Program-made: the position numbers and the translations under genes
Notes under the pieces: generated by a model
Seen by the model: the letters and a program-made list of their open reading frames with translations, nothing else
Database searches by the model: none
What the model was told of the DNA's origin: nothing
Shown: in pieces, positions 14,466 to 25,166 of the stretch
Layout of the letters: each line of letters starts with the position of its first letter
How positions within the stretch are numbered: the first letter of the stretch is position 1
DNA from: Magallana gigas
Lineage: Eukaryota
Direction: 5' to 3'
DNA: 64,000 nucleotides
Assembly: GCF_963853765.1 (NCBI RefSeq)
Contig: NC_088861.1
Span: forward strand, 41,788,001 to 41,852,000

Positions 14466-17280
14466 TCATTCATCTGGAAAGCTGCATATATCTGAAAAGT
14501 AACATGGCATGAAATACATATATTTACAATTTAAAATATCATGTGTTAGAACATTTAGAAGCAGACACAATGTTAGTAAAGCCATCTGGCATCTACTTTG
14601 GTCAATGTATCGTAGTGAACCATCATTCATCAACCCTTTCATAAATACTGCTCTTTGTAGCCAATCTGGTTGTTTTTGGTTCATCATGACAAACTTCTTT
14701 GTCCATGCTGGCATTTTTCTTTGTCTGGTAGATCTTCTTGGGGCTGGAGTAGGTGTATCGTCATTTTCTCTAGAAGGCATTTCATCTTCAGAATCATCAG
14801 ATTCATTGATGTCATCATCAGTACTGTCAACATAATCATGGATGATATCATCATCATCATCATCATCTTTGATGATCTCTTCAGGTTGGTTCTCATGCTC
14901 TCTATACTGATGGGAAGCGTCCTTCCCTGTACCAGCTGCTGAAGCTTCCTCAGTTGTAGATTGATCGTCATCATCTAAACTGGGGGTAACTTTGGAATTT
15001 TCATTTCTAAATGCAGAGTTATCTACATAAGAAAATTCACTGTCAGTAATAATGCTTACTGGTTCTGCCTTCCTTCTCTTTCTAGGAATAACTGGAGGAG
15101 GAGAAGTACTTCTTAGAAGCTTTGTTCCGATAGGTAGAAGCAAATTTCTATGAAGAACTCTAGTTCTTCCTTCTCCATCCTCACGTCTGACTTAATAAAC
15201 AGGAATCTCATCATTTGCTTTCGCTAAAATGACATAAATATCATCTTCCCATTTGTCAGCAATTTTATGTTTGCCGTTGTATACCACTTTCTTGACGAGA
15301 ACTCTGTCACCTTCCTCTAAAGTGATGGCTCTTGCTTTTATGTCATAACGGCATTTCTGCTTCTGCTGAGAAGATTTTATTGCTGTCTGTGCCTGTCTGT
15401 AAGCATCTTGCAGTCTTTGCTTCAGCTCGGATATGTACTTAGTTGTACACTTATCCTCAGAATGGCTGCTGGAAAATCCAAAGACCACATCTACTAGCAA
15501 AACTGGTTCTCTTCCAAACATTAGAAAGAATGGTGTGAACCCAGTTGTATCATGTCTTGTAGAGATATATGCGTGAACCAGTGTGTTAATATGCTTTTTC
15601 CAATTAGCTTTCTGAGCGTTATCTAATGTTCCTAGCATTGATAGTAATGTCCTATTGAATCGCTCTGTAATACCATTACCCATAGGGTGATATGGTGTTG
15701 TCCTGCATATAGAGATGCCAAATATGGAGCATAATTCCTTAATGATGTTGCTGCAAAAATTGGTCCCTTGGTCCGAATGAAGTTTAGCTGGAATCCCGTA
15801 ATGAACAATAAAATGGTTATAAATAGCTTCTGCTGTTGTTTTGGCTGTTTGGTTCTTGGTTGGCACGGCAATTGAATATCGAGTTAAATGATCAGTTATG
15901 ACTAAAATGTTTTATATTCCTCCTTTCGATGGTTCAAGAGTGAGATAGTCCATGCATATATGCTCTAGGGGCTGTGATGTTCTGATGTTGACCAATTCTG
16001 CTCTCTCATTGCTGGTCTTGCTCTTAATGCATCTTTCGCAGGAGTTGATCGAATCAGAAACATCACGCTGTATCTTTGGCCAGTAAAATCTTTGCCTAAT
16101 TAAGGAGAGAGTCTTATCTCGCCCTAAATGACCCATCTTGTTATGCAAGTATTCCAAAACAGTGGGGTACACTGATGCAGGAATTACATATTGCTGATGA
16201 GAATTGTCATCTACTTTGACTTCTCTGAGTAAAATACCATCTCTTACTCTTAATTTGGCGTAGTTCCTATGGTAAACAAAATCATCTTCAGTAATGAGTG
16301 TCTCTCGTTTGGGTCTAATACATTCCTGTATCTTGATTTTTCCAAAAACTAACTGTAGGATCTGTGTTTTTTGATTTCCATGATATCCAAATACTTTCCA
16401 ATATCTGTACAAGGTTGTACTTGGTTACAAATAGCATCATCTTTAGCAAGCTGGGAAATTGCCTTAATGGTGTCACTAGATACTGTTTCCACGTCCTTTA
16501 ATCTGGATAATCTATCTGCATCTATATTTGTTTTCCCTGGTTTGTAGATAATCTTGAAATTAAATGAAGCTAATGCTGAAATCCATCGATGACCATGGTC
16601 AGTTGCATCCAATTTTGCTGAAGTTAAAACATAGGTAAGGGGATTATTGTCGGTGTATACTACAAATTCTTTACCTTGAAGGTAATCAGAAAATTTTTCT
16701 GTGACAGCCCATTTAAGTGCCAAAAATTCCAGTTTGTGAGTAGGATAATTCTTTTCAGATTTACTCAGTCCTCGACTAGCATATGCTATAACTCTACCCA
16801 TTCCATCCTGCTCCTGATATAGCACTGCACCTAGTCCTGTCTGGCATGCATCGGTATGGAGCTTAAAAGGTTTGTCGAAGTCTGTGTAACCTAGGACGGG
16901 TGGTGATGTAAGTTTCTGCTTAATGAGGTCAAATGATGTTTGCTGTTCCTTCTCCCACCTCCACTTTGGATCCACTTTCTTACTTCTTGATTTTTTTCCT
17001 GTGGCCATGATATCTGATAAAGGTCTAGCAATTTTAGAGAAATCATGAATAAATTTTCTATAGTATCCTGCAAACCCTAAAAATTGTCTTACCTCTTCAG
17101 GATTCTGTGGAATAGGCCAGTTTTTAACTTTAGCAAGTTTATCAGGGTCTGGCTCAACCCCATGCTCGGACACAAAGTGTCCTACATATTTAACCTTCTT
17201 CATAAGTAAGGAACACTTTTTGGGAGAAAGTTTAAGCCCATATTCTCTAATTCTCTGGATAACTTGCTGAAGGCGATTAA
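14466..17280 (-). pseudogene. pol: Gypsy pol, 3' part (RT C-terminus, RNase H, integrase, acidic tail)
   Basis: LKLSPKKC and FLGFAGYYRKF (RT); HTDACQTGLGAVL, EFLALKWA and VYTDNNPL (RNase H); HNKMGHLG...CERC (IN zinc finger); CMDYL, LHSDQG and ERFNRTL (IN DDE); RRSTRQRKMPAW tail. Frameshifts and a premature TAA at 15192. Confidence 0.95.
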
Positions 17281-17733
17281 GGTACTTCACTACACCAAAA
17301 TTTTATTTCATTTTTCATTACAGTACCAATAGTTAGACAGATATCAAATATCCATGTGATGATAGTAATATCTTAAGTATTTTAAAATAATTTCTTAATG
17401 TTTTTAGTGATTTTCATTTTAAAAAATATTTCCAGTACATAGTCAATAAAATAGAAGAAGTAATTGTTTCAAAAGATAGATCATTTCCTAAGACACTTTA
17501 AAAAAAATACAACACCTCATATCATTTAAATATGTTTTTATTAAAATTATTTGTGTTTTTCCTAAAAACAACCAGTGTTCGTATCTATTTAATCTGTGAA
17601 TGAATAATTTAGAAATTTTGTTAAAAATAGTAATGAAGTGTAACAAAATGAATACAATATAAATCAAAGTACTGAAGTACTGAAAGCCGGGCTCTTTTGG
17701 TGTGTCTTTGTGCATATTGTGTAGTAAAGACTG

Positions 17734-17737
<4 letters not shown>

Positions 17738-17779
<42 letters not shown>
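17738..17779. repeat. (TC)n microsatellite inside the nested transposon
   Basis: Perfect run. Confidence 0.97.
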
Positions 17780-17781
<2 letters not shown>

Positions 17782-18481
17782 GCTTTTAATGTCGGCAAAG
17801 CATCAGAGAGCGACCAAATTTTGTAAGCGGCTATAAACAAAAAATATGTCTGTCTAGTAGAAGTTAAAAAGTTCAACAGTTGCTGCCTTGAATTTTGCAA
17901 CAAGCATTATATATTCAATCCCCGTTTCTTCATCGCGCAGCAAAGTAGTTCATGGAAATTCATGCGCATTGTATGTGTCCAAAATGCATAGTAGTAATGT
18001 TTTAAAAACACGTTATTAATAAGAAAACTAAGAAAGATAGACAATTCATTCCGAATTTAAAGAAAAGAAACAAAATGCCAACACTTTTGACAAAACTTGG
18101 CTCTTTGTGTAACTATTTGGTATAGCGGAAGCTTTACCTTGACGCTGTTTGGTTTTTTGTTTACTTGTGCTATTTATAGTAACATTGGCGATTTGCCTGC
18201 TTTCAGCAGAGCCCGGCTAAAAATTGAATGAAAAATGTTACAAATAATTGAAATAATTTTCCAAAAAATAATATGGTATGCAAGATCCACTTGTAAGAGT
18301 TATCTTTCCTAATTCTACGGACTGAATCACCATGGGACTTTTTCATGTCTAAAACATACTAATTTCAATACTTTGTTTGAAATGATGTAAATTTGCTGCA
18401 TTTTTTGTTTAATTATTAGAATATAAATCAAAAGTATATGACTGAAAATTACTGGTAATTGAATTTAGAAATTAAACCTTT

Positions 18482-18622
18482 NNNNNNNNNNNNNNNNNNN
18501 NNNNNNNNNNNNNNNNNNNNNNNNNNNNNNNNNNNNNNNNNNNNNNNNNNNNNNNNNNNNNNNNNNNNNNNNNNNNNNNNNNNNNNNNNNNNNNNNNNNN
18601 NNNNNNNNNNNNNNNNNNNNNN
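18482..18622. other. Assembly gap (N run)
   Basis: 141 Ns. Confidence 1.
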
Positions 18623-19189
18623 AATTTACTAACATATTTCAGCAAGTACTCTTTGCAAACTATTGAACAGTGAAGGATCAATAATATGAGCTAATAAATT
18701 ATTAAAGAAAATTTTATTCTAAAAAAAAAAACTCACATAAATTTACACACAAATGCATGCAATGGACAATACAACAGAAAAAAAAGGACAATACAAAAGA
18801 AAAACAGGAATTATAATAATACTTACATTCTGTATAAAGTGCCGACGATGTTCTGATATATATTTTATATTTAAAAAACTTGCATGCAACTACATGTACT
18901 ACAGACACAGACACAAAGAACACAAACAGTACACCACACATAATACTTACATGATGAACATCAAGTTGATACGCTATGGAAACACAAGCTTTTCAAACCA
19001 ACATGATCGACATACTTACAAATAGTGTGTTTTTCCTCAATGATGTCACTAAACATGTTAAAATCTGCAATTGTATAATACATCTAAAAATTTATGGAAC
19101 AAATTAAAAAATATGTATACATTAATAAATTCTACATATATTATTAAAATCAATGTTCAGAACAAGCCTTAACTATCAAAATAAGTTTA

Positions 19190-21611
19190 GCAAAAGTGAT
19201 CATAAATTTTTCCAACTAGTTTTGTTTTTTGTTACCCTAACATTGCCCTGCTCAGTCTTTTCTCCTAAAACCATCTTTAAACCATCAGCACCACCCCTTT
19301 CAATAGCAAGTCTAAGATGGTCATAAGACAGTCCAGACAAGGCAATTTTTTAAGCATGTAGGGAGATATGCATGAAGAGAGGGGAGCTAGTGTAGCAATC
19401 AATTCATTAGTTTAACTCTTGCTCTCAATGGAAGAAATAATAAAGTCTACACCAAAACTGTGCTTCAGCATAATTTCATATGAAACTTTATGATGTATAA
19501 CCAAATATTGTAAGGCCTTAACATCCTCCAATGCTGAATGGGCATTGAAAGCCAGTCCCATAGTATCTTGTACCAGTGTCTGTAGTTTATAGGAGTGTTG
19601 TTCTGGCAATATTTCTCTAAATACATGAAGACTGTCAACAAATCCAGCTATTGTTGATTTTAGTCCACTCTCTGGATACTGCATAACAGATCTCATTAGA
19701 ATTACAGAATCAAATACCTTTCCGTTATGACAAACTAGGATAGGATTTGGAAAAATGTTCAGCCATATATTAAACTCTGTCAAACAAGTCTGAATGTCAA
19801 CTGAGTTCACTTTTGTTTGTTGGTAAAACAATTGTCCACTGGCAACATGGAGACCTGTAACTGCAGTTGCTTTGGCAGAAATGGGGGATTTGGGAAGAAC
19901 ATACCTATTAAAGGTTTCTTCTTCAAATATGCGAGCAAGCTGTGTTATTTCTGCTGATGTATCTATGAAATAAATTAATTACAATGTAGTATACGAGCTA
20001 TGCTTCCTTGAATTAAATTTTAACAATAAATAATGTATAAAAAGCAATGTTACTTAAAGCAAACTGTTCACAGGTGCTGATAAAATTTTGTTTTACTGTA
20101 AGTGCCCAATAACAATAAAATACATGTATTATTTTAATGCAATGAACATATAATAAGAAGTAAAATATGTCTGCATGATTCATTCATGAAATGTCATTTC
20201 CAGTGTTAGAACAAATGATTGTTCAAACCTAGTCCAGTTGTTTCCAAGTCAAAATAAAGAAGGTTTGAGTCTGTATGGGTAGGCACTGAAACAGGTTTGG
20301 AAGCAGGGGTGCAATCTGGGATTTCTTCTATTACATCATCAGCACAAGACATTCCAACACCTGATTCATAGGTTGTTCCTTCTTTTATTTCTGAAGTTGA
20401 TATCTATTGATAAAATTTTACAATGTGAGTTAATTTGACATTGCTAATGGATCGTTTGAAATATAACAATGTTAATTGATTGTAAAAAGAAATTAAATCT
20501 TTACACTTAAACAAGAAAAAATAAGAACAATTCAACTTACATGGCTTGATTTCAATTTCTTTAGTTCATGTCTTCGTCTCTTGCACTCAACAGTGCTTTG
20601 TCGCAATTTTTCTTTTTCTCTCTTTCGAGAAACCCTCCTTTCATGTACATTTGTGTGCATCCTGGGCGAGAGCTTCAAAGTATCGTAAACCTGATGAAAA
20701 ATAAAATTAAATATACAGAGAGCAATAATTACATTTCATATACATATTACATGCATACATTTCTTATTTTGTAACTAGCTGTTATAATGATATATACAAA
20801 AGTAATTATTCTATGTAACATCTGATATACCTTTCCAATTGTCAGATGTCCAATATTCTTATGTGCAACAGCAGCTGCTACTCTAAAGGATGTGCTCTCA
20901 GATCCACTGTAATATAATACTTTGGGATTTTTGCAGGCCACTATTTTGTTGAAGTTTTCATTTGCCTGAGTGCTTCCAATATTGGAAAGTTTACTTGCAT
21001 TTTTAGCTAAATCACTGAACAGATGCTGTAATTTTTGAGTAAATCCACTACAGAAAGATATTTTCCATATGGTAAATTTATGGGTTTCTAATTGTCTGGG
21101 TTCTGTAGATATTTACACCACTTTTTTCACATTTCTTGTGGTTTCCAAATACATGGAGAGGAATAGAGTCTAAATTTCTCTTTAAAGTGTCTGTGTCTTT
21201 GTTGGATTTCACAGCATATGAAAAAACATTTTAGTAAATGTTGAATGGATTTTGGACCTAGAAGAGGATACTTTTTCTCCTTCTTGATGTCATAGAGTTT
21301 ACTTGCCAGATTTTTTTTTGTAGGATTAAAATCCGAAATTTTTTGAATATTTGGATCAAAAGACATTTTTGCCTTGGCTAAGGTTGTTGAGTCATTATCC
21401 ATTATAAGATGTTTTACATGGAGGTCACGTGCTTTTAAGTCAGGCAACATTTCTAAAGCCATATCTGGTTCCATTGCCTTTGAGGATTTTTCCTAATTTC
21501 TTCTACAATCATGTTTATTCACTTCTGCTGATACTGGTGCTTTATCACAAAATCTGTATTTTAAAGAAATCAATTTATCAGTACATGTTTTTATCTGATT
21601 ACATCTAAATT

Positions 21612-21660
<49 letters not shown>

Positions 21661-23390
21661 AGGGGTGAGAAGAGAAGAGAGCACACTAAAAGCCCTACCT
21701 GCATTTCTTGCACCGAACAGCATATGAAAGAATTTTTCCTGTCTTCTCTCCATACTCGCATGCCCTGAAAAAGCAACAACACTTTGTCTTATTGCTATAT
21801 TTCAATACCAGTAAGTCCAACAGTATACATATACATGTATTTCCTACTTACAAGACTGTTTATTATCTCCCCTTAAGGGAACTACTTTGTTTTAAATACA
21901 AAAACTGCTATACTGTTAGGTTTTATGTAGCATTGGGATGCTTGAATAATTATGCAAAATATAAAAAATGAATGATGGATGTTACCTGACAAACTTGCAT
22001 AGTTTCGACCGCTACCTCTGGTCTGCCGTCCAGCATCAAAGGACACGGAAAAATTTTCGGCATCTTGTGATCTATGTTGAAATTTGTATCAATTTATAAA
22101 TAATCTTTAACCTATTAAGTCACTGAGAAAATATCATATGTTGAAATAAATCAGTAAAAAAAACATTTCTACTGAACCTTTTTTTCTCCTCGGCAAGGGC
22201 TTCATTACAAGTCTCATTTGCAACAGCTTCAAAAATACTGTCAACCTCCCTCTCTCGTCTCTTAAAAGTTACAGAAGTTACAGTGGGAATATTCAATGCA
22301 GCAAGGAAATTGTTAACGGTCATTTCTCCAAGTCCACAAAATACCACAGCTGCAATGAAAATAAAAAAAAAATTCAAGATTTGATATTAGAAATCCATTA
22401 TTATTTTCTTTCATGTTTTATAATTTAACAATTATCTATCAATCAATAGAGTTAATATAATACCTGCATCCAATTTTGTATTAATATCCCAGGTATTTTG
22501 ACCATGTCTCTTGCCAGTAGGTACATTATTAATTTCATTGCAATTATTGCAATGAATTTTGAGGAGGCTGCCTATAATAAAAGAAATGTTCAACAACTTG
22601 TGTATTTTGAAACTGTAAGTTATCTACCCTCTATTATAATTTAAAAGATTGATATATTTTAAATTAAATGATATATTGTCATCTATTCAGATAATTATGA
22701 ATAGGAGGAAAACTAATTAATGTCTTAGATACCTAGGCCATATCTGGTTTCTCCAACACAGGAGGAAAGTTTTAGCTCTGTAGAGCAATTACTGCAGCCT
22801 TCATCTAATTTTGCAGCCAAAACACTCAACTCTACAATCCTGCGACCTCCAAGAGCCCCCTCCTCTTCTTCCTTATCCTCATCTTTTTCGCTTTCAAACT
22901 CTGATTGACATGCATCATAGTTGTCATCAAAGCAATCATCTGCTATGATATAAATCAATATTCAGACAGATCGAATTTCAGTTGGCCATTTAATTGATTT
23001 TTGTCTATCATAATACTCAGTAATTGCAAAAATCATGGTGCATTCAAATGTAGTTAATTTACCTGGTGACAAAGACTGGTTATGTTCTTGTTGACCATCT
23101 ATATCATCATGTAGTTCCAAGTATTTACGTTTTAGACCTAGATAGAATTTTAGCAAAATGTAAATTTCATGGTTTTCTCTGAATGTATCAAATGTTATAA
23201 TAAACTAATGCAATGTTCTTTGTGCCTATAATTATTTAAAATTTCAAACTTATTTTATATACACATCATACCTCTGCTATAGCAATGTTCTTTACTTATA
23301 TTCTCAAGCTGTCCATCCGTAATGTCACCTAAATTTAGTAAACACACATTTCTGTTTGCCGACTCCGTGGGCGTGTCCATATTTCATTGC
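19190..23390 (-). pseudogene. Multi-exon DDE transposase fused to a C-terminal DEDDh 3'-5' exonuclease and a PML-C-like helical tail
   Basis: Exons joined at GT-AG give GRRIVEL..C..C, VSFDAG(W>R)QTRGSG (D1), KTGKILSYAVRCKKC, HDCRRN*..SSKAMEPD, LIMDNDSTT (D2), GSTQANENFN (E), EGTTYESG, then YFDLETTGL / HNGKVFD / HSALED. Contains several stops and frameshifts. Confidence 0.85.
21614..21655. repeat. (GA)n microsatellite in a transposase intron
   Basis: Perfect run lying between the GTAGGG donor and the next acceptor on the - strand. Confidence 0.95.
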
Positions 23391-23618
23391 CGTCTTGTTG
23401 CTCTCAATGTAACTTAGTTCTTTTTTTTTCGTATTCAATATCTCCCTTTCAAAAACGTTTTAAAGATTAAGATCTCTTTCAATAGATTTCTTCCTCTTTT
23501 TTAAAAGAGCTGTACCTATACAATTCGTCCCCGACAAAAACAACCGTTCCCGGAAATACGTTCTACGAAGTGTATTTTTTGTGTACTGCGTCATCAAAAA
23601 CTGATGTAGTGCAAGACC

Positions 23619-25166
23619 TTAAGATGTTCCCTCAAAGATTTAGAAAATATGATTAAATCATCTAAATATATAAAACAAATTTTGAGATGAAGGTCGCCTA
23701 AACATTGCTCTTGAAGATGCTGATATGTTGCAGGGGCGTTTGCAAGGCCGAAACTCATGCGGTTGAATTCATAAAACCCAAGTGGACCAACAGTGAAGGC
23801 AGTTCTCTCCTTATGCTCCTCTGCAATTTCTATCTGATGATAGCCGGATTTCATGTCTAATACACTGAAGTAGGTGTTACCTGAAAGAGAATCTAAAATC
23901 TCTTCTATTCTAGGCAGAGCATAATTATCTTTGATAGTCCTAGAATTAAGATACCTATAGTCTATACATAGCCGCAAGGATCCATCATGCTTTCTAACTA
24001 AAACTACATTAGATGAAAACGGAGAATGAGATGGTCTGATAATGCCTGCAGCTAGTAAATACTTGATGTGAGTACGGACTTCCTCAACCAATGCTGGTGG
24101 TACTCTCCTGTACTTCTGCTTAAAAGGTATCTCATCAAGGAGTTCAATTCTGTGCTTCACTTTGTCCGTTGTACCTATGTCTGTTGCTCCTGTTGAGAAT
24201 ATATCCCTGTATTAAATACGAATTCAACAAATTCAAGCAGACCTGTTTTTCATCTTCTCCAATATCATCTGGGAGTTGAATTTTGGATATAATATCCTCA
24301 ATTTGTTCTGAGCTTGACAAAGAAGATTTCTCAACTGTTGTGTCCTCAATAGCAACAGGCTGTATTTCGCAAATCACTCCTTTTGGGGATATTGAAATAG
24401 TCCTAGTTGTTATATTGTTGATGGTTACAGGCATTGTTTGACACTCTTCATACACATACTGATGCAGTGTAGCTTCTATGTCTACATCAGATGGAATGCA
24501 GGATTTTTCAGATTGCTGCATCATGACAGTTACTTGATGATAAGAAATCTTCTTATCCAAGTATCCGAGAATGGTCACATGACTGTTCGGAGGGATGATA
24601 ACTCTATCTGTCTCAGCACTCTTTACTAATCCTAATACATAGCCATGTCTGTGTAACTCCCTCTCTCTCAATGCAAGGCATCTGAATGCTAAATACTATG
24701 GTGTGTAAATGGCTGCATCCTGCAGAAATCTTATGCCAAACTCCTGTTTTGTCACATCCATCAGGTTCTGTAAGATGTTTGTTCCTATAAGCACTGGTAC
24801 ATGTGCATTATAATTGCTCTTGGGAACAACTAAAAACAGACAATCATTTAGTTTGTTCAAAGATGGAATACCAAATGGTGTTAAATCAACACATACATAG
24901 CCAAGATAGGGCATCAGTTGACCATACGCACACTCTATATTGATAACGTTGTCCAGTGAATGAAGCTCTTCATCTGAAAGGTACTGATTATAAAATGCTT
25001 CGCTTAGAGTGGATACCGTTGCTCCTGTATATAGAAGAGCTGTACATTGTACATCATTGATGGCCACTGATATTTCATTTGGTTTTCCAATTAGTTGTTT
25101 TTCATTGGGACCCTTGATCCTCTCGCCAACCCCTTGTCCCCAGGTGCTGACGTGTTGTAGTTTAAA
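23619..25166 (-). pseudogene. pol: Gypsy pol, 5' part (aspartic protease, spacer, RT N-terminal part)
   Basis: ALL(Y)TGATVS (catalytic D>Y), VLIGTNIL, SPFSSNVVLVRK, LRLCIDYR, LDMKSGYHQI, FGLANAPATYQ, YLDD. Confidence 0.95.

What the first reader, a model, noticed from the sequence alone, without database searches (positions are those of the whole stretch)
17281..23618. Cut-and-paste transposon whose transposase carries a complete DEDDh 3'-5' exonuclease
Seen: TTAA TSD and short TIRs delimit a spliced gene. The DDE triad (SFDAG, MDND, ANENF) is followed in the same orientation by a linker and ExoI FDLETTG, ExoII HNGKVFD and ExoIII HSALED, with all catalytic residues present despite decay elsewhere. 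A phase-1 intron (20228-19963) joins ExoI to the rest in frame. Established: DEDDh is the RNase T/TREX1/DnaQ fold, and typical DDE transposases do not need it. Kolobok lineages are known to carry accessory proteins or nucleases; I cannot confirm whether this exact fusion is a named subgroup. Inference: the exonuclease may process ends or hairpins, or degrade competing retroelement cDNA.
Basis: partly seen in the sequence, partly recalled or inferred. Interest (0 to 1): 0.7.

Follow-up and report, generated by a model that had tools for sequence, protein, structure and literature searches.

The report
Decayed KolobokD transposon, PML-type exonuclease
This is a broken copy of an already named oyster jumping gene (KolobokD) whose transposase is fused to a DNA-trimming exonuclease; the less ordinary point is that this exonuclease module is close kin of the fish Plex9 / vertebrate PML exonuclease, a link I found in no paper.

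Summary
Window 17281-23618 (minus strand) is a 6,338-bp cut-and-paste element. It has TTAA duplications, GG..CC termini and an imperfect 18-nt TIR, and it sits inside a gypsy-like RT gene of the Pacific oyster. Five paralogous empty sites carry a single TTAA.

One 1,883-nt spliced contig joins the main transposase exon to the exonuclease exons.

The 885-codon frame encodes a Kolobok DDE transposase, a basic linker, a DEDDh exonuclease and a PML_C (SAM-like) tail. The window copy is dead, with 6 frameshifts and 3 stops. The N gap lies 565 bp beyond the stop codon, in non-coding DNA.

The fusion is not new. It is the KolobokD lineage (Kojima & Bao 2022, PMC9587614), known from molluscs, arthropods and cnidarians, and it is abundant in this genome.

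The added point is kinship. The closest solved relatives by a wide margin are Plex9.1-type exonucleases (142-177 bits, against 49 for Exuperantia and about 30 for TREX1). All ten oyster modules scanned carry Pfam PML_C. The PML and Kolobok papers I searched do not mention each other.

This scan reached the same reading on other DNA of this genome (s1-361641, s1-375642).

The parts
23619..23622 (-). TTAA target-site duplication, upstream side
   Evidence: Empty sites with a single TTAA in L039-L043.
17277..17280 (-). TTAA target-site duplication, downstream side
23601..23618 (-). 5' terminal inverted repeat, starting GG (Kolobok 5'-RR)
   Evidence: Same terminus in 5 other copies.
17281..17298 (-). 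3' terminal inverted repeat, ending CC (Kolobok YY-3')
23272..23380 (-). Exon 1, with the ATG at 23380
   Evidence: RNA joint 23138-23271 in 4 runs. GT/AG kept in all copies.
23063..23137 (-). Exon 2
   Evidence: RNA joints.
22733..22942 (-). Exon 3: acidic stretch and the first CxxC of an N-terminal zinc ribbon (CSNCS 22782-22796)
22464..22571 (-). Exon 4: second CxxC (CNNCN 22537-22551); PF20700 profile positions 41-81
22178..22349 (-). Exon 5: PF20700 profile positions 77-135
21986..22071 (-). Exon 6: first catalytic D (SFDAG 22029-22043)
21699..21764 (-). Exon 7: start of the CCHC finger. This copy lacks 4 bp near 21750, a frameshift
   Evidence: (table 4).
20831..21553 (-). Exon 8: transposase core with the end of the CCHC finger, second D (MDND), DxxH signature (DFNP in this copy), H/C finger and catalytic E (ANENF). 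Broken by 2 stops (21493-21495, 21088-21090) and 3 one-base indels
20541..20690 (-). Exon 9: basic, Lys/Arg-rich linker
20229..20403 (-). Exon 10: linker and ExoI motif (FDLETTG 20233-20253)
19963..20228 (-). Phase-1 intron just after ExoI. Its position is kept in other KolobokD families of this genome
19187..19962 (-). Exon 11: ExoII (HNGKVFD), ExoIII (HSALED) and the PML_C/SAM-like tail. This copy has a TAA stop at 19412-19414 and two frameshifts (about 19351 and 19218). The family's stop codon is at 19187-19189
18482..18622 (.). Assembly gap (N) in the 3' non-coding part of the element
   Evidence: Flanks are collinear with other copies. Letters not looked up.
17664..18218 (-). Nested insertion of an abundant interspersed repeat of about 555-565 bp, absent from the other five copies
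   Evidence: 40 scored copies at 86-96% identity; 1,101 first-look candidates.
23623..24160 (-). Host: upstream part of the interrupted gypsy-like reverse-transcriptase ORF (observed only)
16349..17276 (-). Host: downstream part of the interrupted RT/RNase H ORF (observed only)

Best explanation
Window 17281-23618 is a dead copy of a young, low-copy KolobokD family in the Pacific oyster (Magallana/Crassostrea gigas). [quoted passage not shown]

Shown:
- The copy inserted at a TTAA inside a gypsy-like retroelement and duplicated that TTAA.
- Its single 11-exon gene has an 885-codon frame. In order it encodes an N-terminal zinc ribbon, a Kolobok DDE transposase (with a CCHC finger, a DxxH signature and an H/C finger), a basic linker, a DEDDh 3'-5' exonuclease domain and a PML_C (SAM-like) tail.
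- Related copies are transcribed and spliced so that transposase and exonuclease share one frame.

Inferred:
- The transposase cuts and pastes the element at TTAA.
- The tethered exonuclease is an active DNA 3'-5' exonuclease. Its closest solved relative is zebrafish Plex9.1, which has been crystallised bound to ssDNA.
- It acts on DNA ends made during transposition, trimming 3' ends or flaps at the excised element, the donor break or the target gap. That is the role Kojima & Bao proposed.
- A second, not exclusive, possibility is a TREX1/Plex9-like clearing of free DNA, such as retroelement cDNA.
- The SAM-like tail probably serves nucleic-acid binding or self-association, as in Exuperantia and PML.
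For: Identity as a Kolobok element:
- TTAA duplications, GG..CC termini and a TIR, shared by 5 other copies at different loci.
- Five empty paralogous sites.
- PF20700 hits on three exons; PF00929 and PF25244 on exon 11.
- All the motifs that Kojima & Bao use for Kolobok are present in the family frame (paper).

Fusion:
- 10 introns with GT..AG ends were seen as RNA joints across 4 runs from 4 studies.
- X14 record 9 (1,883 nt) runs from exon 8 through exons 9 and 10 into exon 11.
- Exon lengths give phase 1 at the ExoI intron.
- NCBI model P0001 uses the same exon 9-10-11 splices.

Lineage-wide linkage:
- At least 31 exonuclease loci have a PF20700 hit 1-4 kb upstream on the same strand (my manual comparison of the coordinates).
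- 15 of 20 sampled loci have a transposase, or a remnant of one, upstream.
- Transposase and exonuclease distances co-vary (Mantel r 0.85, 10 loci).
- Atlas clusters with PF20700 + PF00929 + PF25244 occur in Cnidaria, Mollusca and Arthropoda.
- P0035, a gene model from another oyster, carries all three domains.

An active-type exonuclease:
- ExoII H-N..D and ExoIII H..D are invariant across 14 modules that are 25-44% identical.
- ExoI D-x-E is present in 11 of the 13 diverged loci where the ExoII/ExoIII scan found a module.
- PDB profile search: 9l8b 177 bits, 9l85 160 bits, Plex9.1 142-146 bits.
- Plex9.1 is the top Foldseek match. Exuperantia EXO+SAM aligns over 315 columns.
Against: - No copy in this assembly is fully intact. 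The best one, L003, still has one 1-bp deletion, so current activity of the family is not shown.
- The RNA evidence is from assembled contigs, not raw reads. Contigs can be chimeric between near-identical copies and cannot give isoform ratios.
- Unspliced contigs over introns 8, 9 and 10 also exist.
- Nothing here tests exonuclease activity, its substrate or its role in transposition.
- The structure model is only moderate (mean pLDDT 63; the N-terminal 120 residues are poor).
- I could not place the transposase in a tree with Repbase KolobokD references.
Confidence: 0.92

Rival explanations
1. The two enzymes are mainly made as separate or alternative products, and the fusion protein is a minor form. 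Intron retention or a frame-shifting small exon would yield a transposase-only protein, with the exonuclease made by another route.
For: - Unspliced RNA contigs cover intron 8 (X7, X13), intron 9 (X7, X13) and intron 10 (X2, X13) (table 8).
- Retaining intron 8 would end the frame 28 codons after exon 8 (ORF 20747-20941).
Against: - The direct joints exon 8-9, 9-10 and 10-11 appear in 3-4 runs each.
- One contig spans all of them with no extra exon.
- The summed exon lengths keep one frame.
- Unspliced contigs may be pre-mRNA or DNA carried over into RNA libraries.
- Contigs cannot rank isoforms.
Confidence: 0.12
2. The exonuclease is a host gene recently captured by this one family, or mis-joined to it by annotation. 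It would not be a stable part of the transposon lineage.
For: DNA transposons do capture host fragments. Five of 20 sampled exonuclease loci showed no transposase within 8.8 kb upstream.
Against: - Linkage holds in families only 25-45% identical.
- Distances of the two domains co-vary.
- The intron after ExoI is at the same position across families.
- The same three-domain architecture occurs in cnidarians and arthropods and is published.
Confidence: 0.03
3. It is a domesticated host gene, or a piggyBac-type element, since piggyBac also targets TTAA.
For: TTAA duplication. An NCBI gene model exists.
Against: - Six dispersed copies with TIRs and TSDs, and empty sites, each copy broken independently.
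- Pfam finds PF20700, not a piggyBac transposase.
- The termini are GG..CC, which Kojima & Bao give as the feature separating Kolobok from piggyBac.
Confidence: 0.02

Closest known systems
KolobokD lineage of the Kolobok superfamily (Kojima & Bao 2022, Mob DNA 13:24, PMC9587614)
   Same: - TTAA duplication and 5'-RR..YY-3' termini.
- DDD/E transposase with a C/DxxH signature, a zinc finger before the catalytic E and a CCHC finger after the first D.
- A DEDDh (DnaQ-type) exonuclease.
- A mollusc host. The authors noted similarity to Exuperantia, TREX and ERI1.
   Different: Nothing defining differs. This report adds:
- spliced-RNA support for a single fused frame;
- the PML_C/SAM-like tail;
- a conserved intron after ExoI;
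- the specific closeness to Plex9/PML.

The paper gives KolobokD one short paragraph, and its text does not mention these points. I could not check whether this exact family is already in Repbase.
Plex9.1 / PML C-terminal DEDDh exonuclease (CDE) of jawed vertebrates (Mathavarajah et al. 2023, PMC10123124; PDB 9MRC and 9MRD; probably 9L8B and 9L85)
   Same: - A DEDDh fold with all catalytic residues.
- By far the best sequence matches among solved structures (142-177 bits).
- Pfam PML_C follows the exonuclease, as in PML-I.
- Plex9 and gar PML are active DNA exonucleases that restrict L1, according to the paper.
   Different: - Here the module is the C-terminus of a transposase inside a mobile element of an invertebrate.
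- It has no RBCC/TRIM part and no synteny with the PML locus.
- Its activity is untested.
- The solved Plex9.1 chains are 195 residues long, and the PXL paper (PMC13659232) says that only Exuperantia, among PXL's structural homologues, shares the EXO/SAM arrangement.
Exuperantia (Drosophila; PDB 5L80)
   Same: An EXO-like domain followed by a SAM-like domain. It aligns over both domains in Foldseek. Pfam Exu_RNase_H_like reaches or nears its cut-off in several oyster modules.
   Different: Exuperantia is a pseudo-exonuclease that has lost the DEDD residues and works in RNA localisation. Here the catalytic residues are conserved. Sequence similarity is much lower (49 bits).
TREX1 / TREX2
   Same: DEDDh 3'-5' DNA exonucleases with a similar fold.
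   Different: Only distant in sequence (about 30-41 bits). They have no SAM-like tail. They are host genes.
KolobokE and KolobokP (other Kolobok lineages with accessory nucleases)
   Same: The same superfamily and the same idea: a second nuclease encoded downstream of the transposase.
   Different: [quoted passage not shown]

Membership tests
Kolobok superfamily / KolobokD | [quoted passage not shown] | tested here: met
   TTAA on both sides here and in 3 other copies. Single TTAA at 5 empty paralogous sites.
Kolobok superfamily / KolobokD | Termini 5'-RR ... YY-3' (this separates Kolobok from piggyBac) | tested here: met
   GG...CC in all copies whose ends are present. Criterion taken from PMC9587614.
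Kolobok superfamily / KolobokD | DDD/E transposase of the Kolobok type | tested here: met
   PF20700 on three exons (E 8.5e-13, 7.9e-12, 1.6e-6). D (SFDAG), D (MDND) and E (ANENF) are present.
Kolobok superfamily / KolobokD | [quoted passage not shown] | tested here: met
   DFNH in copy L003. The window copy reads DFNP, so the His is lost in this dead copy.
Kolobok superfamily / KolobokD | Zinc finger between the signature and the catalytic E | tested here: met
   H-x4-H-x2-C-x4-C, window 21129-21155 and the following codons.
Kolobok superfamily / KolobokD | Second CCHC finger downstream of the first D (found in KolobokP, E, D and 5) | tested here: met
   C-x2-C ... H-x-C spanning exons 7-8.
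Kolobok superfamily / KolobokD | A DEDDh (DnaQ) exonuclease encoded with the transposase | tested here: met
   PF00929. ExoI, ExoII and ExoIII motifs. PDB matches. One spliced frame.
Kolobok superfamily / KolobokD | Transposase falls in the KolobokD clade with Repbase reference families | not testable with these tools
   No Repbase sequences were available. Atlas neighbours with the same three Pfam domains are only indirect support.
Plex9 / PML C-terminal exonuclease family | DEDDh domain specifically similar to Plex9 / PML CDE rather than to TREX | tested here: met
   Profile search: Plex9.1 142-146 bits and 9l8b 177 bits, against TREX2 41 and TREX1 about 30. Single-exon search: E 3e-27 to 1.6e-16.
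Plex9 / PML C-terminal exonuclease family | PML_C (SAM-like) domain after the exonuclease, as in PML-I | tested here: met
   PF25244 is above its 27.1-bit cut-off in all 10 oyster modules scanned (27.6-87 bits) and in the window fragment (42 bits).
Plex9 / PML C-terminal exonuclease family | RBCC/TRIM N-terminus (PML), or a stand-alone host gene syntenic with the PML locus (Plex9) | tested here: not met
   The N-terminus is a Kolobok transposase and the gene lies inside a mobile element. It is therefore a homologue of the module, not a PML or Plex9 orthologue.
Plex9 / PML C-terminal exonuclease family | 3'-5' DNA exonuclease activity and restriction of retroelements | not testable with these tools
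   Needs biochemistry and cell assays.
piggyBac | piggyBac-type DDD transposase | tested here: not met
   Pfam gives PF20700 only, and the termini are GG..CC. TTAA alone is shared.
Exuperantia | EXO-like plus SAM-like domains, with the DEDD catalytic residues lost | tested here: not met
   The two-domain arrangement is shared, but the catalytic residues are conserved here.

The most novel reading that the evidence does not exclude
The exonuclease-plus-SAM-like module of jawed-vertebrate PML (exon 9 / CDE) and of fish Plex9 descends from the accessory module of a KolobokD-like DNA transposon. On this reading, an anti-retroelement host factor that appeared in jawed vertebrates was domesticated from a transposon, much as RAG came from Transib.

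In favour:
- The transposon-borne module, with intact catalytic residues, occurs in cnidarians, molluscs and arthropods. PML/Plex9 is reported only from jawed vertebrates.
- Zebrafish Plex9.1 scores against an oyster KolobokD profile (142-146 bits) almost as well as oyster KolobokD families left out of the profile (161-177 bits).
- Most exonuclease+PML_C modules sampled in the oyster are transposon-linked.

Not excluded: an ancient host gene captured by Kolobok, with PML/Plex9 descending from that host gene.
Probability: 0.35. Interest if true: 0.75.

Novelty: already known. Interest (0 to 1): 0.35.

Why it matters

Two things give it some value.

First, it supplies evidence that the short published description of KolobokD does not give:
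- spliced RNA that puts transposase and exonuclease in one frame;
- a SAM-like PML_C tail;
- an intron position conserved across families;
- co-divergence of the two domains.

Second, it ties two literatures that do not cite each other. The PML/Plex9 papers ask where the PML exonuclease came from and find nothing before jawed vertebrates. The Kolobok paper compares its exonuclease only with Exuperantia, TREX and ERI1.

If the module moved from transposon to host, PML would join RAG as a vertebrate innovation built from a DNA transposon. The KolobokD enzymes would then be natural, catalytically intact models for the ancestral PML exonuclease.

Tried and rejected
- **Word searches for relatives.** The search with the exonuclease exon and the one with a 14-sequence profile returned only molluscan proteins. 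No vertebrate sequence could be obtained, so I could not build a tree of KolobokD, Plex9 and PML exonucleases. These blanks say nothing about absence, because of the length window and the need for shared words.
- **Big HMMER search.** I did not run the search of protein representatives. Its best 150 hits would also most likely have been molluscan transposon copies.
- **PML_C fragment against PDB.** The 49-residue fragment gave only a chance hit (E 1.6). PML's own PXL structure did not appear, so it is either not in these copies or too diverged.
- **Genome fetch.** The linkage sample is therefore 20 loci, not 52.
- **Repeat finder.** I did not repeat it, because the TIR had already been aligned.
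- **Joined spliced protein.** I sent no joined protein to any search, family scan or fold. All of those were run exon by exon, by reference. Frame bookkeeping and motif reading across exons were done inside scripts only, with X at breaks.
- **N gap.** I did not fill it and did not read the letters of other copies opposite it.
- **Cumulative phase tracking and a first majority frame.** The cumulative tracking marks every exon after the first break as full of stops, so it cannot place later breaks. The first majority frame dropped one coding column. One search corrects both.
- **Within-family dN/dS.** It rests on few substitutions. I use it only to say that the exonuclease is not more relaxed than the transposase.
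- **Rejected readings.** piggyBac, a domesticated host gene and a one-off capture; see the rival explanations.

Full report
**What is there**

Read on the minus strand, window 17281-23618 starts with GGTCTTGCACTACA and ends with TGTAGTGAAGTACC. TTAA flanks it on both sides. It interrupts a gypsy-like reverse-transcriptase ORF. The RT sequence reads straight across once the element and one TTAA are removed.

A search of the window's own assembly (564 Mb in 29 contigs) found five more full-length copies at 95-97% identity. A 96% match to XP_019929051.1 identifies the species as Crassostrea/Magallana gigas. The matches to the other copies end exactly at the TTAA.

The copies share the termini but sit in unrelated flanks. 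TTAA is on both sides in three of them. One has a mutated 5' flank and one is truncated at its 3' end. Five paralogous copies of the host retroelement (98-99% identical) have a single TTAA and continuous flanks. So this is a real insertion with TTAA duplication. The TIR is short and imperfect, with 15 of 18 aligned positions matching.

**The N gap**

The gap at 18482-18622 lies 565 bp beyond the family's stop codon (19187-19189), so no reading frame crosses it. The sequences on both sides are collinear with the other copies, in which the matching interval measures 64-180 bp (coordinates only).

This copy is longer than the others (6,338 bp against about 5.6-5.8 kb). The reason is a nested 555-bp insertion at 17664-18218 of a very abundant repeat.

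**The gene**

Pfam, scanned exon by exon by reference, gave:
- PF20700 (Mutator-like transposase, the Pfam model that Kolobok-type transposases match) on three exons;
- PF00929 (RNase_T) on the last exon;
- PF25244 (PML C-terminal domain), in another frame just after the stop of this copy.

RNA contigs of four runs from four studies were laid on 19200-23300. They show joints with GT..AG ends on the minus strand for ten introns. This gives 11 exons:

| Exon | Window coordinates |
|---|---|
| 1 | 23380-23272 |
| 2 | 23137-23063 |
| 3 | 22942-22733 |
| 4 | 22571-22464 |
| 5 | 22349-22178 |
| 6 | 22071-21986 |
| 7 | 21764-21699 |
| 8 | 21553-20831 |
| 9 | 20690-20541 |
| 10 | 20403-20229 |
| 11 | 19962-19187 |

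The small offset in the reported joint comes from a base difference in the expressed copies.

One contig (X14 record 9, 1,883 nt) runs from the main transposase exon 8 through exons 9 and 10 into exon 11 with no extra exon. The other three runs show the same junctions piecewise.

The RNA contigs come from better-preserved copies. They differ from the window exactly at its breaks, for example at 19414, at 21494, and by the four bases missing near 21750.

**State of the copies**

All six genomic copies keep every splice site. In the shared frame of 885 codons:
- The window copy has 6 frameshifting indels and 3 stops.
- L003 has a single 1-bp deletion.
- The copy at L006/L007 has a 126-bp in-frame deletion plus a 1-bp insertion.
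- None is fully intact in this assembly.

**Motifs in the family frame**

- Zinc ribbon: CxxC...CxxC.
- First D: SFDAG.
- CCHC finger.
- Second D: MDND.
- DxxH signature: DFNH. In the window copy it is DFNP.
- H/C finger.
- Catalytic E: ANENF.
- Basic linker.
- ExoI: FDLETTG.
- ExoII: HNGKVFD.
- ExoIII: HSALED.
- PML_C tail.

The joined step was left out of all tool searches and used only for frame bookkeeping inside scripts.

**What it is called**

Kojima & Bao (2022, PMC9587614) define Kolobok by three kinds of feature:
- TTAA duplications;
- 5'-RR..YY-3' termini;
- a DDD/E transposase with a C/DxxH signature and characteristic zinc fingers.

They name the lineage that carries a DEDDh (DnaQ) exonuclease KolobokD. 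They found it in molluscs, arthropods and cnidarians while they were working on the Pacific oyster genome. Every sequence feature they list was tested here and met. Only placement in a tree with Repbase references could not be done. KolobokD appears in only this one paper in the library.

**Is the exonuclease a stable part of the element?**

- The oyster genome holds at least 120 six-frame matches to the exonuclease+PML_C module, many of them with open frames.
- It holds at least 120 PF20700 matches.
- At least 31 exonuclease loci have a transposase hit 1-4 kb upstream on the same strand, by my manual comparison of the coordinates.
- Of 20 loci I fetched, 14 have a detectable transposase upstream. 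One more keeps the N-terminal transposase exon.
- Across 10 loci with long ORFs for both parts, the distances of the two domains co-vary: Mantel r 0.85, permutation p about 0.0005, with divergence up to about 75% in both. Two near-identical copies inflate this somewhat.
- ExoII and ExoIII residues are invariant in 14 modules that are 25-44% identical.
- ExoI (D-x-E) sits on its own upstream exon, ending at the same place (TTGLG/S), in 11 of the 13 diverged loci where the ExoII/ExoIII scan found a module.
- Within the window's family, pairwise dN/dS is 0.52 for the transposase and 0.54 for the exonuclease plus tail (few substitutions).
- Protein-atlas clusters with all three Pfam domains are commonest in Cnidaria, Mollusca and Arthropoda.
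- A Saccostrea gene model carries all three domains.

**What the exonuclease resembles**

A single-exon search of PDB sequences found only four entries:
- 9l8b, E 3e-27;
- 9l85/9l87;
- 9mrd and 9mrc, the last being zebrafish Plex9.1 according to PMC13659232.

A profile of 14 oyster modules gives the following:

| PDB entry | Bits |
|---|---|
| 9l8b | 177 |
| 9l85 | 160 |
| Plex9.1 (9mrd, 9mrc) | 142-146 |
| Exuperantia | 49 |
| TREX2 | 41 |
| TREX1 | about 30 |

Oyster KolobokD families left out of an exonuclease-only version of the profile score 161-177 bits. So Plex9.1 sits at the edge of KolobokD diversity rather than far outside it.

All ten oyster modules scanned carry PML_C above Pfam's cut-off.

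An AlphaFold model of P0008 is moderate (mean pLDDT 63, good from residue 120 onward). Its best Foldseek matches are Plex9.1, TREX2 and Exuperantia EXO+SAM, the last aligned over both domains.

**What the papers say**

The PML/Plex9 paper places the origin of PML in jawed vertebrates. It says that Plex9 and the PML CDE are unrelated to TREX. My word searches of its text found no mention of transposons. The 2026 PXL paper does not mention them either. No paper in the library links Kolobok with the PML exonuclease.

**Mechanism**

Shown:
- insertion at TTAA with duplication;
- one spliced frame for transposase and exonuclease;
- long-term conservation of the DEDDh residues within the lineage.

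Inferred:
- The exonuclease is an active 3'-5' DNA exonuclease of the Plex9/TREX kind, tethered to the transposase.
- It most likely trims DNA ends made during excision or integration, as Kojima & Bao suggested.
- Unspliced contigs over introns 8-10 leave room for a transposase-only isoform.

**Earlier notes of this scan**

- One follow-up on other DNA of this genome (s1-361641) reached the same KolobokD/PML reading.
- Another (s1-375642) reports a frame-shifting 35-base exon in a different KolobokD family. In this family the contigs show no such exon, though contigs can miss rare forms.

**Verdict**

The kind of element is already known. Interest is modest, and it is raised only by the undiscussed kinship with PML/Plex9 and the possibility that the vertebrate module came from such a transposon.

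Noticed in passing
window 17664-18218: A nested 555-bp insertion, absent from the other five copies. It belongs to a very abundant repeat family of about 565 bp (40 scored copies at 86-96% identity; 1,101 first-look candidates). It holds a (GA)n run. Its type was not determined.
   Followed up: partly
window 23497-23608; L033-L037: The 5' subterminal 112 bp of the element matches more than 30 other loci at about 75%. Five that I fetched belong to another element family inserted at TTAA, with terminus GGTGGCTCTATACACCAC followed by the same TTTTTGATGACGCAGT stretch. It is probably a related Kolobok family, possibly non-autonomous.
   Followed up: partly
window 16349-17276 and 23623-24160; L039-L043: The host gypsy-like retroelement is young: at least 10 genomic copies are 96-99% identical over the 400 bp tested. 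Observed only.
   Followed up: partly
G000:C10:22878911-22895566; C1:23256699-23282507; C7:48695936-48708189; C4:44256505-44260810: PF20700 transposase hits occur in tandem arrays spaced about 1.9 kb or 3.7 kb apart. This recalls the KolobokP multimers described by Kojima & Bao.
   Followed up: no
L013, L016, L019, L021, L024-L026, L029-L032: Across KolobokD families only 25-45% identical, ExoI lies on a separate exon that ends at the same point (TTGLG/S), 260-820 nt upstream of the ExoII exon. This is an old, conserved intron position that could be compared with plex9 and PML gene structure.
   Followed up: partly
window 20376-20570, 20665-20858, 19912-20256: RNA-library contigs cover introns 9, 8 and 10 unspliced, in 2 runs each. 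They could be pre-mRNA, carried-over DNA, or isoforms that end after the transposase.
   Followed up: no
L022-L025, L027: Five exonuclease+PML_C loci, four of them with long open exonuclease frames of 231-285 codons, show no transposase within 8.8 kb upstream. For L022 a PF20700 hit lies 17 kb upstream. These are candidates for truncated elements or for stand-alone (domesticated?) modules.
   Followed up: partly
window 21606-21683: A (CT)n microsatellite inside intron 7. The reads tool skipped it as a repeat.
   Followed up: no
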